Below, in pieces: positions 17,855-34,690 of a stretch of 64,000 nt of DNA. Positions within the stretch are counted from its first letter, which is position 1; every line of letters begins with the position of its first letter. The notes beneath the pieces are model-generated. The model did not search any database, was not told where the DNA came from, and saw only the letters and a list, made by a program, of their open reading frames with translations. The stretch covers positions 1,612,001 through 1,676,000 of the forward strand of contig OZ365113.1 of assembly GCA_977030845.1 (NCBI GenBank). The letters are read 5' to 3'. Source of the DNA: Fimbriosthenelais zetlandica. Taxonomy: Eukaryota. The position numbers were made by a program, and so were the translations under genes.

Positions 17855-18410
17855 TCTGTTTTTGTACTGCTTTTTTCCATGCCGTTCGTTCCACTTCTCG
17901 AACTACCAAGTTATGTATGGGAAAGAGAACGCCCTGGTAAATAGATTTAGGATAAAATTTAGAAGTAAATTTGGGCCACTGAGATGACTTATTTAAAATC
18001 ATTTATTAATTATTAATATTTATTTGTATTTCTTTCTTTGCAGTTCTATGGAAGCTGTACGTCCTTAGGATCATTGTTGACTGCATTCAGCATTCCGCCT
18101 GCACCTTTGATGATGAACAAATGAGAATTACCAAGTTTTGGTAGATAGGTGAAAGAAAATGTAATAAAACGAAATAAATCAAATCCAAATAAATTATTTT
18201 ATTTGTTTTATTGAATCATGTACCTAGTCAGGATCTGCCACAGTATTAAGTGGGGACTTACACTATAGAGGAATTCCTGCTCTTATTATGAAGATGTCGT
18301 CCTACAGCTCGGTGTTCAGAGGCCGCGTTCACACACATCTCCAACCCCGGCACCAGCACTGCTAAACCGTATAAATATGTAGCAACCCATGAAGCAGAAA
18401 AAAGGTAAAC

Positions 18411-18480
18411 GTGACGGGGAATCGAACCCCGGTCGCTCGTGTTCAAGGCCAGTGTCTTACCTCTAGACCACCTGACTCAC
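18411..18480 (-). pseudogene. tRNA-Asp/Gly-like head (degenerate)
   Basis: D arm GTCT-AGAGGTA-AGAC, T arm CGGGG-TTCGATT-CCCCG, A and B boxes, and a T-run after it. Acceptor stem broken. Confidence 0.7.
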
Positions 18481-20290
18481 ATGTCTCTATGCGACACCCC
18501 TTCATATTTAGCTTGAACCGCCCAGAACAAGGATGAATCACAATGTGTATAATTATTTGGCCCCTGGCCCCCAACCTCCAACCCTACCCCCATATCTACC
18601 CCCAGCACTCCCACCAACTCCCTCTAAAAGACCAGCCATATTCGAAAAGGCTAACATGTGAAAATCCGAAGGAATATCCCACTATGTAGATACTGCCCAT
18701 AGGCTCCAATGTTAAAAATTGTTTAACCCCCCGGACCCCTCCCCGGCCCCCAACTTCCATCCCGACCCCCATGTTTACCCCCGGCACCCACCCCAATACA
18801 CTCCTTAAAATTCAGCCTGATTCATTGCTTCTAACCTGTCTAAATTCCTTGGTTTCCGTAAAAGTGCACGCTCCATAGGCGCAATGTTAAAAGTCACTCA
18901 CGATTACATGGATGTGTGCTACAGAGCCGGTTTACCAGTCCACTCCAATCGGCTCTTTTTCTACTTAATATGTGTTATTTTCACTCAACTCCCCAGTTAT
19001 GTATAACTTATGACCTCTACTGTTAATTCGCAAAAGAGCAGATATGGAAAATGAGGATAACCCCGATTTCTGCGAAGTTGACAAATCGGCCGAGCGCATA
19101 CCGGCCTATAATTTGGCCTTTTAAAAACCTTAACAGCGCCCTCTCACTAAAAGTCGAAAAAGTTGAATAACTCTGTAAATAATGGGTCTAAAATTACAAT
19201 TCGAACGGATTATTCTTAGTTGGGAGACCCTTCAGATGTGTATGTGGTTTTTGTTTCAATCATATTGATTTAAAATTTCTGATTTTGAAAATGGACTGAA
19301 TTTCTTCAATTAGCATTAGAGTCAATGGAAGGAGGCGGCCGGGCGCATGTGGCGACCCGAGATGCCCTAGCGGCAAAAACGTGAACTACTATGCACCAGC
19401 CAGCATAGCCTGAATGAAAGGCCTCGCCTTCCAGCCGGGAGCGACTTGGGACTCGAGATGTCCTAGCGGCAAAAAGACGAACTACGAAGTCTATCCCGGC
19501 TGGAAGGCCAAGCTAGTCCTACTGGCTATGCTGGCTTGAGCATAGTAGTTCACGTTTCCGCCGCTAGGACATCTCGGGTCGCCACATGCGCTTGGGCGCC
19601 TCCTTCCATTGACTCCAATGTTATATGAAGAAATTCAGTCCATTTTCAAAATCAGAAATTTTTAATGACTTTTATTGGAACAAACACCACATAGACAGCT
19701 GAAGGGTCTCCCAACTAAGAATAATCCGTTTGAATTGTAATTTTAGACCCATTATTTACAGAGTTATTCCTCTTTTTCGACTTTTAGTGAGAGGGCGCTG
19801 TTAAGGTTTTTAAAAGGCCAAATTATAGGCCGGTATGCGCTAGGCCGATTTGTCAACTTTCCAGAAATCGGGGTTTTCATCGTTTTACTTCTCCGCGCTT
19901 TGGGGGTATATCAGTAGAGGTCATAAGTTATACATAACCGTGGGCTTGAGTGAAAATAATATGTACTAAGTAGAGAAAAAGCCGATTGGAGTGGACTGGC
20001 AAACCGGCTCTGTAGCACACATTCCTGTAATCGTGAGTGATTTTTAACATTGAGCCTATGGGCGGGACACTTTTGCTGAATCCAACGGATTTAGACAGGT
20101 TAGAAGCATCGAATCGGGCTGGTTTTTTGGGAGGGTATTGGGGAGGGTGCCGGGGGTAGACATGGGGGTTGGGGTGGAGGTTGGGGGTCCGGGAGGGGTC
20201 CGGGGGCTGAATAATTTTTAACATTGGAGCCTATGACAGTACCGCCTGGGCGGTTCAGGCTAAATATGAAGGGGTGTAGCATAGTGAACT

Positions 20291-20365
20291 GTGAGCCAGG
20301 TGGTCTAGAGGTAAGACACTGGCCTGGAAAGCGAGTGACCGGGGTTCAAATCCCCGTCTAGTCAC
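20291..20365 (+). pseudogene. tRNA-Asp/Gly-like head (degenerate)
   Basis: GTGAGCCAGGTGGTCTAGAGGTAAGACACTGGCCTGGAAAGCGAGTGACCGGGGTTCAAATCCCCGTCTAGTCAC followed by TTTTTTT. TAAATAT about 30 nt upstream. Confidence 0.72.
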
Positions 20366-20610
20366 TTTTTTTCTGCTACAGGGTTCGCTACATATTTATA
20401 CAGCAATGCTGGTGCCGGGGTTGGAGACGTGTGTGAACGCGGTCTCGTTAATTATTTTTCTGATCCAGAATGCTTGTTCCCGCTAGATGGCGTCAGTGAC
20501 GTTTGGTGCTGGGCTCTGCCACCAGATGGCACACAGTCGCTTGTTATGATAGTGTGTTGACAAACGGGAAAAATCAAAGCCCAAGTCAAGTTGAGTGAAA
20601 AGTGCTTTGC

Positions 20611-20680
20611 AAGACTGGGAAGCGAACCCCGGTCTCTCACGCGCCAGGCCAGTGTCTTACCCCTAGACTACCTGTCTCAC
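20611..20680 (-). pseudogene. tRNA-Asp/Gly-like head (degenerate)
   Basis: Same D arm and GAGACCGGGGTTCG segment, facing outward from element 2. Confidence 0.62.
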
Positions 20681-33452: not shown

Positions 33453-33467
33453 GGGATCGATTAGCCT

Positions 33468-33478
33468 ATTCTCCACCA
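33468..33478 (-). other. Primer-binding site, tRNA-Ala-like
   Basis: TGGTGGAGAAT, 3 nt after the 5' LTR, complementary to a tRNA 3' end ATTCTCCACCA typical of eukaryotic tRNA-Ala. Confidence 0.75.
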
Positions 33479-33481
33479 AAT

Positions 33482-34224
33482 TATCATATAGGTCCTTTCC
33501 GGGGATCCGTATATGACAATGAAAGGCTGACAGATATCCGATAGCTTTTAGGAATATTTTAATAACAAAGAGTGGAAGATCACAAAGTTACACTTTCTTG
33601 AAATACAATTGAAACTCTCAAACCTGGTTAAAGGAGTAGCTTCTGAATTAAAGGTACACTTCAGAGATGTTCACAATTATCAATGTCCAATGGATTGTTC
33701 TGATAATGTTCTTTCAACACAATGTCCAGTTTAGGTCTCAATATGAAAAGTAGTGTCACAGTCCAAAGGTTTGGTCCTAAAGTGTAGTTAGTCTTGTGAG
33801 TAGGTTGCTACGATCAATGGTGTTACTGCTGTTGCCCCGATGTTACTGATCCTACAACAGGACCACAGCTTCTTATAAAGGAAAACTGAATTCCCATTAA
33901 CTTGTTTACTTCAAGAGAATTCTTGTAGCATTTCTATATCTACCAACACTGGGGATTCCCCATCCATGTCGTCATTTCTAGAAGACACGGAGTATCTTCC
34001 TGGAAATCCTGGTGACGCAAATGCTGATGCTGCTTCTGGTAATGGGTTTGCACGAAGAGGAAACCCATCTTTCATAGTGTTCATCCTGTTTGCGTTCACT
34101 TCCCCCAAACTGGATCTTATATGTTCTTATATGAAACAACTACTTCTATCAGAATTACTATGTGGTTAAATATCTTAAAGGTAATAGTGATTACATATTT
34201 AGCTTCACAATTCTAACCATTACA
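33482..34224 (-). repeat. 5' LTR (743 bp)
   Basis: Direct repeat of 24358-25100. Confidence 0.97.
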
Positions 34225-34228
34225 CATC

Positions 34229-34690
34229 CATGTAATCGTGAGTGATTTTTAACATTGCGCCTATGGACGGGACACTTTTGATGAATCCAATGGATTTAGA
34301 CAGGTTAGAAGCATTGAATCGGGCTGGATTTTTGGGAGGGTGTTGGGGTGGGTGCCGGGGGTAGACAGGGGTGTTAGGGAGGAGTTTGGGGTCCGGGGAG
34401 GGGTCCGGGGGGGCTAAATAATTTTTAACAATGCAGCCTATGGGCAGTACCTCCACAGTGGGCTATTCGAATAGAGGGGGTGGAGTGCATTGTAGTGTGA
34501 GACAGGTAGTCTAGGGGTAAGACGCTGGCCTGGAACGCGAGAGACTGGGGTTCGATTCCCTGTCATGTATATCATTTTTCATTGCTCCCTTGATCGCTAC
34601 ACATTTTTACAGCAGTGTTGATTTGTTGTTTTTTTTTCGTTTGTCACTATATTATATAGCTGGCCCTACTAATCAGTCTAACCCGAAAAC
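34229..34690. repeat. Foldback element 3, remainder of right arm
   Basis: Continues the arm sequence interrupted at 24357. Outer flank resembles 22781-22895. Confidence 0.85.
34497..34567 (+). pseudogene. tRNA-Asp/Gly-like head (degenerate)
   Basis: GTAGTCTAGGGGTAAGACGCTGGCCTGGAACGCGAGAGACTGGGGTTCGATTCCC. Confidence 0.65.

What the first reader, a model, noticed from the sequence alone, without database searches (positions are those of the whole stretch)
18319..34690. Array of three ~2 kb foldback elements, each capped by outward-facing tRNA-like Pol III units
Seen: six ~0.9-1.1 kb arms alternate in orientation (F-R, F-R, F-R). Each outer end carries a tRNA-like head pointing away from the centre (18480-, 20291+, 20680-, 22709+, 22984-, 34497+). 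Heads keep the D arm (GTCT/AGAC), T arm, A/B boxes and usually a T-run. At least two have TAAATAT about 30 nt upstream. The acceptor stem is broken and the anticodon position varies (GGA, GGC, TGA). The variable loop and T arm GAGACCGGGGTTCGATTCCCCG match tRNA-Asp as I recall it. Unlike a SINE, the long conserved body lies 5' of the head. No transposase ORF or clear TSD was found. Inference: an undescribed palindromic mobile or amplifying unit producing short tRNA-like RNAs, or TFIIIC-bound boundary elements around a cruciform or hairpin-RNA source.
Basis: partly seen in the sequence, partly recalled or inferred. Interest (0 to 1): 0.75.

Follow-up and report, generated by a model that had tools for sequence, protein, structure and literature searches.

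The report
Inverted-repeat array of decayed tRNA-like genes
Six diverged copies of a 1 kb segment, each ending in a defective tRNA-Asp-like gene, lie in alternating orientation inside a tRNA gene cluster, and they look like local inverted duplications reshuffled by gene conversion rather than a new mobile element.

Summary
Six arms of about 1 kb alternate in orientation, and each ends outward in a tRNA-like unit. Rfam tRNA scores are 25-49 bits, against 60-68 bits for the 17 true tRNA-Asn and tRNA-Arg genes in the window.

All six heads share a G.G mismatch in the anticodon stem and a broken acceptor stem, and their anticodons differ. Their common ancestor was therefore already a defective, tRNA-Asp-like gene.

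- Arm F is split by a 9,867-bp Ty3/gypsy LTR retrotransposon with identical LTRs and a CATC target duplication.
- The array lies between the inverted arms of a larger imperfect palindrome carrying tRNA-Asn genes and an M60-like gene.
- Identity between arms is mosaic (99-100% in some blocks, 60-75% in others), which points to gene conversion.

The three "elements" do not share the same ends. No convincing target-site duplication, transposase or other copy was found in the window.

Best reading: local inverted and tandem segmental duplication of a tRNA-pseudogene-bearing segment, followed by concerted evolution. Mobility and Pol III activity could not be tested, because no genome of the source organism (probably a mollusc or other lophotrochozoan, not human) was reachable. 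Interest is modest.

The parts
18319..19470 (-). Arm A (body plus head plus 88-nt 3' flank of type 1). It carries an extra 179-nt sub-repeat at 18556-18670.
18407..18477 (-). Head A: tRNA-like, anticodon position TGA, followed by T6
   Evidence: Rfam 34.3 bits
19487..20446 (+). Arm B, inverted partner of A (733-nt arms, 87% complementary, 39-nt gap)
   Evidence: (I1)
20294..20364 (+). Head B: best-preserved tRNA-like unit, anticodon position GGA, followed by T7
   Evidence: ARAGORN; Rfam 49.1 bits
20447..20595 (.). Unique 150-nt spacer at the B|C tail-to-tail junction
20596..21415 (-). Arm C. It lacks the -30 TAAATAT region and the type 1 and type 2 flanks.
20611..20681 (-). Head C: below the Rfam threshold, with B-box A58 changed
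   Evidence: 27.7 bits
21416..21806 (.). C|D spacer, unique and low-complexity ((CCCCCG)5.5 and GAGACA runs)
21807..22896 (+). Arm D, with the extra 179-nt sub-repeat and a type 2 3' flank
22709..22779 (+). Head D: most decayed, with B-box G53 changed
   Evidence: 25.4 bits, partial
22897..23705 (-). Arm E, abutting D's flank directly
22911..22981 (-). Head E: anticodon position GGC, 90-95% identical to head B
23798..24357 (+). Arm F, inner part, 93-99% identical to the inner part of A
24358..34224 (-). Ty3/gypsy LTR retrotransposon inserted in arm F. The 743-bp LTRs (24358-25100 and 33482-34224) are identical. The target duplication is CATC (24354-24357 and 34225-34228). ORFs: gag 32352-33479, pol (PR-RT-RNaseH-INT) 28512-32228, third ORF 25479-28127.
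34225..34690 (+). Arm F, outer part, 94-96% identical to the outer part of D, with a type 2 flank
34500..34571 (+). Head F: tRNA-like, anticodon position GGA
   Evidence: Rfam 34.3 bits
12487..17897 (+). Left arm of the larger imperfect palindrome: tRNA-Asn genes and an M60-like gene
35193..45053 (-). Right arm of the larger palindrome (70-92% identical, collinear, inverted), with about 3 kb extra at 36440-39479

Best explanation
The array is a product of local genome rearrangement, not a machine. A segment of about 1 kb ended in an already defective, tRNA-Asp-like gene, with its own TATA-like -30 box, T-run terminator and about 45-90 nt of 3' flank. That segment was copied in place in both inverted and direct orientation, giving the pattern A< >B C< >D E< >F.

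The likely route is replication template switching or fold-back at short inverted repeats, as in inverted-triplication (ODIRA-type) events, plus tandem duplication. All of this happened inside a tRNA gene cluster that is itself built of inverted duplications.

The copies then diverged by 10-18% and exchanged blocks by gene conversion. They also gained or lost a 179-nt sub-repeat and suffered deletions. Very recently, one arm took a Ty3/gypsy insertion.

The heads are decaying tRNA pseudogenes. Four of the six still have consensus A and B boxes and a terminator, so they may still be transcribed by Pol III or bind TFIIIC, but nothing in the sequence shows selection for that.

Shown: the anatomy, the defects shared by all heads, the mosaic identity, the inconsistent termini, the palindromic context and the retrotransposon insertion. 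Inferred: the duplication mechanism and order of events, gene conversion as the cause of the highly conserved core, and the absence of function.
For: - **Shared defects.** Pairs 29:41 and 4:69 are unpaired in all six heads, anticodons differ, and covariation does not exceed shuffled controls. The 17 true tRNA genes nearby are near-identical and score 60-68 bits.
- **No special conservation of heads.** Heads are 68-90% identical, against 82-90% for the body.
- **Mosaic nearest neighbours.** A-C are 99-100% identical in alignment columns 761-920 but 70% in the inner body. D-F are 94-96% in columns 361-600. B-E are 91-98% in columns 121-680. A-F are 95-99% in columns 1001-1200. This pattern fits gene conversion and also explains the 93-97.5% 'core', which has no ORF and no RNA-structure signal (z = 0.10 and 1.15).
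- **Inconsistent ends.** Termini differ among the three foldbacks.
- **Mirror relation.** Foldback 1 matches foldback 3 better in inverted orientation (90.6% over 1472 nt) than in direct orientation (86.1%).
- **Palindromic context.** The flanks 12487-17438 and 45024-39479 are collinear inverted copies carrying the M60-like gene and tRNA-Asn genes.
- **A second inverted pair.** tRNA-Arg doublets are inverted at 6434-6683 and 9455-9197.
- **No other copies.** No arm copy lies elsewhere in the window.
Against: - No genome of the source organism could be searched, so a dispersed family cannot be excluded.
- The 420-500 nt between the array and the nearest tRNA-Asn gene on each side are not detectably homologous. 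The array is therefore not seamlessly part of the larger palindrome.
- Flank types group A with B and D with F, whereas centres and heads group A with F and B with E. No single duplication order fits all the data.
- The arms keep more CpG than their surroundings (observed/expected 0.74 against 0.56 for the window, and 1.41 in the core). CpG columns are no more variable than other columns (31% against 30%). This could mean a protected or bound state rather than neutral DNA.
- T-runs persist behind all six heads, and the A box is nearly invariant.
Confidence: 0.6

Rival explanations
1. The foldback is a copy of a non-autonomous foldback- or MITE-like DNA transposon family whose long inverted arms end in tRNA-like units. 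The three copies here arose by nested or adjacent insertion, or by local re-transposition.
For: - The long inverted arms make up almost the whole unit.
- The outer arm contains 179-nt sub-repeats of variable copy number, as in classical foldback elements.
- A and B share a defined outer end (18319 and 20446), flanked by GTTCA and GTTAA.
- There is no coding capacity.
Against: - Termini are not shared among the three units.
- The candidate target duplication is imperfect and could easily arise by chance.
- No other copy or fragment lies in 64 kb.
- There were no hits in the viral, metagenome or prokaryotic genome scans, although those collections are poor in animal DNA.
- Copies are 10-18% diverged, so there is no sign of recent activity.
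Confidence: 0.15
2. The array is a functional locus. One version has convergent or outward transcription of the arms, giving hairpin RNA or endo-siRNAs. Another has long transcripts whose 3' ends are cut at the tRNA-like unit, as with MALAT1 and mascRNA. In either version the tRNA-like units could also act as TFIIIC-bound boundaries.
For: - A boxes, most B boxes, the -30 TATA-like box (four of six) and the T-runs are retained.
- CpG is retained in the arms.
- A TATA-like motif sits in the highly conserved core.
- The arms have very strong hairpin potential.
Against: - There is no covariation or excess conservation in the heads.
- Core conservation is explained by recent conversion tracts.
- The core has no structure signal.
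- The mascRNA model scores only 20.9 bits against a threshold of 42.5.
- One arm is tolerated with a 9.9-kb insertion.
Confidence: 0.1
3. The palindromic array is an assembly artefact made from chimeric fold-back reads.
For: Inverted duplications are a known long-read artefact (my own knowledge).
Against: - The arms differ by 10-18% and carry arm-specific indels and a mosaic pattern. Artefactual palindromes would be near-identical.
- An LTR element with a clean 4-bp target duplication interrupts one arm.
Confidence: 0.02

Closest known systems
[quoted passage not shown]
   Same: The array lies inside a dense tRNA gene cluster: 17 true tRNA genes in 64 kb. It consists of tRNA-like pseudogenes in anti-parallel pairs. 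Turnover is rapid, in contrast to the near-identical functional tRNA genes.
   Different: Here about 1 kb of 5' flank is co-amplified with each pseudogene, and the copies form near-perfect long hairpins.
Inverted triplications and ODIRA-type inverted amplicons (PMC4689423)
   Same: [quoted passage not shown]
   Different: There are six copies rather than three. The event is old, so the short inverted repeats at the junctions and the replication origin that the model requires cannot be checked.
Foldback transposons (Drosophila FB, sea-urchin TU elements; from my own knowledge)
   Same: Long inverted arms with internal sub-repeats, no coding capacity, and variable arm length.
   Different: There are no uniform termini, no clear target-site duplication and no evidence of dispersal. 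tRNA-like ends are not a described feature of those families.
tRNA-derived SINEs, for example the bivalve HCD-SINEs (PMC11481361)
   Same: A tRNA-related unit with A and B boxes is joined to a conserved non-tRNA body.
   Different: The body lies 5' of the head, a T-run follows the head directly, and there is no 3' tail or LINE-like end. That is the wrong polarity for a Pol III-driven retroposon.
Animal tRNA-Asp(GUC) (sequence in PMC5699543, Table 2)
   Same: From the anticodon loop to the end of the T arm, the head consensus matches at 30 of 33 positions. The match is exact for the variable loop and the whole T arm (comparison done by hand).
   Different: The 5' half matches at only about half of its positions. 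The acceptor stem does not pair and the anticodon is not GTC.

Membership tests
Functional tRNA gene | Seven-base-pair acceptor stem and five-base-pair anticodon stem | tested here: not met
   Acceptor stem 59.5% of cells paired, with pair 4:69 unpaired in all six. Anticodon-stem pair 29:41 is unpaired in all six.
Functional tRNA gene | The same anticodon and near-identical sequence among gene copies | tested here: not met
   Anticodon positions read TGA, GGA or GGC, and heads are 68-90% identical. The true tRNA-Asn and tRNA-Arg genes in the window are near-identical.
Functional tRNA gene | Score at or above the Rfam RF00005 gathering score | tested here: inconclusive
   Four of six pass (34.3-49.1 bits) and two fail (27.7 and 25.4). 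True tRNA genes here score 60-68 bits.
Pol III type 2 transcription unit | A box, B box and a downstream T-run | tested here: inconclusive
   The A box is nearly invariant. The B-box consensus is intact in A, B, E and F and altered at invariant positions in C and D. T4-T7 lies within 12 nt of all six heads. Transcription itself is not testable.
tRNA-derived SINE | tRNA-related head at the 5' end, with body and tail downstream of it | tested here: not met
   The body is upstream of the head, and a terminator follows the head directly.
Foldback or MITE-type DNA transposon | Long terminal inverted repeats | tested here: met
   Arms of 733 nt, 87% complementary.
Foldback or MITE-type DNA transposon | The same termini in all copies, flanked by target-site duplications | tested here: not met
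   There are two different 3' flank types, and two arms have none. The only candidate duplication is a 4-of-5 match.
Foldback or MITE-type DNA transposon | Dispersed copies at unrelated loci | not testable with these tools
   No source genome is available.
Local inverted or tandem segmental duplication with concerted evolution | Adjacent copies in alternating orientation with variable breakpoints | tested here: met
Local inverted or tandem segmental duplication with concerted evolution | Mosaic blocks of high identity between different copy pairs | tested here: met
Local inverted or tandem segmental duplication with concerted evolution | Surrounding single-copy genes also duplicated in inverted orientation | tested here: met
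   The M60-like gene and its flanks at 13356-17438 match 44501-39479. The 420-500 nt next to the array on each side are not homologous.
Ty3/gypsy LTR retrotransposon (the insertion in arm F) | Identical LTRs, a short target duplication, and gag followed by PR-RT-RNaseH-INT | tested here: met

The most novel reading that the evidence does not exclude
The unit belongs to an undescribed family of palindromic elements whose ends are tRNA-like Pol III/TFIIIC sites. It would either be mobile, or be a hairpin-RNA source insulated by tRNA-like boundaries and kept unmethylated. The retained A boxes, T-runs, -30 TATA-like boxes and CpGs would then reflect function rather than youth or gene conversion.
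Probability: 0.1. Interest if true: 0.7.

Novelty: new member of a known kind. Interest (0 to 1): 0.3.

Why it matters
If the ordinary reading holds, the locus is a clear worked example of how tRNA gene clusters in an invertebrate genome grow: by nested inverted duplications, followed by homogenisation through gene conversion, while pseudogenised tRNA copies decay. It is useful for annotation, because these heads will be called as tRNA-Ser(GGA) or tRNA-Ala(GGC) by tRNA finders and should be flagged as pseudogenes. It is also useful for studying palindrome stability. It would matter more only if genome-wide data showed a dispersed family or Pol III/TFIIIC occupancy.

Tried and rejected
**Known RNA in the body.** The Rfam scan of 18200-24400 at E up to 5 found only the heads and insignificant miRNA or mascRNA hits at the palindrome centre and in head B.

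**Structured RNA in the conserved core.** Folding 19060-19235 on both strands gave z = 0.10 and 1.15.

**Coding capacity.** ORFs in the arms are short, differ between arms, and all frames of the core are closed (and direct reading).

**Copies elsewhere.** Exact-pattern scans were made of viral contigs, metagenome contigs (twice, with core and head patterns) and prokaryotic genome contigs. All returned nothing. These collections hold little animal DNA, so the blanks are weak evidence.

**Tool closures and searches not run.**
- The best database relatives of the window's own proteins are only 39-59% identical, so the source species is evidently absent and a blank would say nothing.

**Literature string searches.** Searches for head and core motifs found nothing.

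**Seamless large palindrome.** The sequences between the array and the nearest tRNA-Asn genes are not homologous.

**Other ideas considered and dropped.**
- Read-through of a retrotransposon primer-binding site into its tRNA primer: rejected, because the heads have no CCA and are followed by gene-type T-runs.
- tRNA-Sec or vault RNA (Pol III genes with a -30 TATA box): rejected on length and for lack of any Rfam hit.
- Retrotransposon-mediated chimerism of arm F: rejected, because the switch in F's nearest neighbour lies far from the insertion site and the target duplication is clean.
- Assembly artefact: rejected because of the divergence between arms.

**Handling rules followed.** The M60-like gene is split into two ORFs. 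I searched them separately by reference and did not join them. The window is not human: its tRNA-Asn differs from the human one as I recall it, and its retroelement relatives are molluscan. The N run at 4840-5038 was left untouched.
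Full report
**What is there**

Repeat finding, a self-BLAST and a seven-row alignment show six copies ("arms") of a segment of about 1 kb in strictly alternating orientation:
- A 18319-19470
- B 19487-20446
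- C about 20596-21415
- D 21807-22896
- E 22897-23705
- F 23798-24357 plus 34225-34690

A|B, C|D and E|F are head-to-head pairs, with 39, 390 and 92 nt between the arms. B|C and D|E are tail-to-tail junctions, with 150 and 0 nt of spacer. The A|B centre folds as a near-perfect DNA hairpin (-272 kcal/mol, z = -41). No copy of the arm lies elsewhere in the 64 kb.

**The heads**

Each arm ends outward in a tRNA-like unit of about 71 nt. Rfam's tRNA model gives these scores against a gathering score of 29:
- B 49.1 bits
- E 40.6
- A 34.3
- F 34.3
- C 27.7
- D 25.4

The 17 genuine tRNA genes in the window are Asn-GTT and Arg-ACG. They score 60-68 bits and are near-identical to one another.

Pair counts on the cloverleaf:
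- The D arm is 100% paired and invariant.
- The T arm is 90% paired.
- The anticodon stem is 77% paired, with pair 29:41 unpaired in all six copies (G.G by my reading).
- The acceptor stem is only 59.5% paired, with pair 4:69 unpaired in all six.
- Covariation does not exceed shuffled controls.

The anticodon position reads TGA, GGA, GGC, GGA, GGC, GGA. Because the defects are shared, the ancestor of all six copies was already a defective tRNA.

From the anticodon loop to the end of the T arm, the head consensus matches a published animal tRNA-Asp at 30 of 33 positions, and the variable loop and T arm match exactly (PMC5699543 Table 2; compared by hand). The 5' half and the acceptor stem do not match well.

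Features relevant to Pol III transcription:
- Four heads (A, B, D, E) have TAAATAT at -33 to -27.
- All six heads are followed by a run of at least four T within 12 nt.
- The A box is nearly invariant.
- The B box is at consensus in A, B, E and F, but changed at invariant positions in C and D. These are the two heads below the Rfam threshold.

First, arm F is interrupted. Positions 24358-34224 are a 9,867-bp Ty3/gypsy LTR retrotransposon on the minus strand:
- It has 743-bp LTRs that are 100% identical.
- It has a CATC target duplication.
- It has open gag, pol (PR-RT-RNaseH-INT) and third ORFs.

With it removed, foldback 3 is about 2 kb like the others. Identical LTRs set against 10-18% divergence between arms show that the insertion is far younger than the array.

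Second, the array lies inside a larger imperfect palindrome. The stretch 12487-17438 is collinear, in inverted orientation, with 45024-39479 at 70-92% identity. This stretch carries an M60-like (TCAF-like) gene and tRNA-Asn genes. A tRNA-Asn gene lies about 0.5 kb outside each end of the array, pointing toward it. Further left, tRNA-Arg doublets are also inverted relative to each other (6434-6683 against 9455-9197). Inverted duplication is therefore a property of this whole region, not of the arms alone. However, the 420-500 nt directly flanking the array on the two sides are not detectably homologous.

Third, identity among arms is mosaic:
- A and C are 99-100% identical across alignment columns 761-920 (A 19029-19188), but about 70% in the inner body.
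- D and F are 94-96% identical in the outer body.
- B and E are 91-98% identical from the head through the outer body.
- A and F are 95-99% identical near the centre.

The centre of foldback 1 is asymmetric, and it reappears mirrored in foldback 3. The inverted match is 90.6% over 1472 nt, against 86.1% for the direct match. Yet the 3' flanks group A with B (type 1, 88 nt) and D with F (type 2, 117 nt), while C and E end at the T-run. No single order of duplications fits all of this. Repeated gene conversion or recombination among the copies does fit.

Conversion also accounts for the feature that at first looks functional: a 160-nt core (A 19069-19228) that is 93-97.5% identical in all pairs. 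That core has no open frame, no RNA-structure signal (z = 0.10 and 1.15) and no Rfam match.

**Interpretation**

The heads are no better conserved than the rest of the arm (68-90% against 82-90%). The three "elements" lack common termini. The only candidate target duplication is a 4-of-5 match. There is no transposase. I therefore read the array as local inverted and tandem segmental duplication of a segment carrying a tRNA-Asp-like pseudogene, followed by concerted evolution and decay.

[quoted passage not shown] Anti-parallel pairs of tRNA genes and pseudogenes in clusters are widespread in eukaryotes (PMC2888827). The mechanism and order of events are inferences, because the junction microhomologies are no longer readable at this divergence.

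**What remains open**

The arms retain CpG: observed/expected is 0.74, against 0.56 for the window and 0.42 for the retrotransposon. CpG columns are no more variable than other columns. Together with the persistent A boxes and T-runs, this leaves room for residual Pol III or TFIIIC binding, or for a protected chromatin state.

Whether the family is dispersed in the genome could not be tested:
- The scans of viral, metagenome and prokaryotic collections were blank.
- The source species is absent from the protein collection. The best hits are 59% for pol, whose named relatives come from Pinctada, Haliotis and Mytilus, and 39% for the M60-like ORF.

These hits suggest a mollusc or other lophotrochozoan host, but only weakly. 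The window is not human.

**Verdict**

This is a new example of a known kind of structure. Interest is 0.3, with about a 10% chance that a more novel reading (a dispersed palindromic family with Pol III/TFIIIC ends, or a hairpin-RNA locus) is correct.

Noticed in passing
window 24358-34224 (minus strand): A young Ty3/gypsy-type LTR retrotransposon with 100% identical 743-bp LTRs and a CATC target duplication. Its ORFs are open: gag (375 aa), pol (1238 aa) and a third ORF of 882 aa (25479-28127) with no Pfam family, which may be env-like. The closest named pol relatives are molluscan (46%), and the top hit is 59%.
   Followed up: partly
window 13855-16485 (-) and 41368-44013 (+): Two inverted copies of an M60-like (TCAF-like) peptidase gene, each split into two ORFs. 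The best database relative is only 39% identical, and vertebrate TCAF about 22%. The right copy contains a short-period tandem repeat at 42888-43208.
   Followed up: partly
window 6458-10946: Six identical tRNA-Arg(ACG) genes in two divergently oriented groups. The doublets 6434-6683 and 9197-9455 are inverted copies (84%). The copy at 9359 has a changed last base.
   Followed up: no
window 12577-12968, 17781-17854, 35216-35438, 36213-36436, 44738-44959: Eleven tRNA-Asn(GTT) genes, mostly in arrays with a period of about 150 nt and with conserved 5' flanks. Two variants are probably impaired: 35365 has a G-to-A change in the T arm, and 44738 has a changed 3' acceptor base.
   Followed up: no
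window 36440-39479: About 3 kb is present only in the right arm of the large palindrome. It has strong GC skew (0.24 at 36-38 kb), and none of its ORFs has a Pfam match.
   Followed up: partly
window 18319-24357: The arms retain CpG: observed/expected is 0.74, and 1.41 in the core, against 0.56 for the whole window and 0.42 for the retrotransposon. CpG columns are not more variable than other columns.
   Followed up: partly
window 18556-18670 and 22512-22630: Arms A and D carry an extra copy of a C-rich sub-repeat of about 179 nt. The motif CCATAGGCTCCAATGTTAA marks the sub-repeat starts (7 matches against 0.01 expected by chance).
   Followed up: partly
window 56247-57104 (-): An ORF with C2H2 zinc fingers.
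   Followed up: no
window 62674-63018: A tandem repeat with a period of about 21 nt.
   Followed up: no
window 4840-5038: A run of 199 N (gap or masked). It was left untouched.
   Followed up: no
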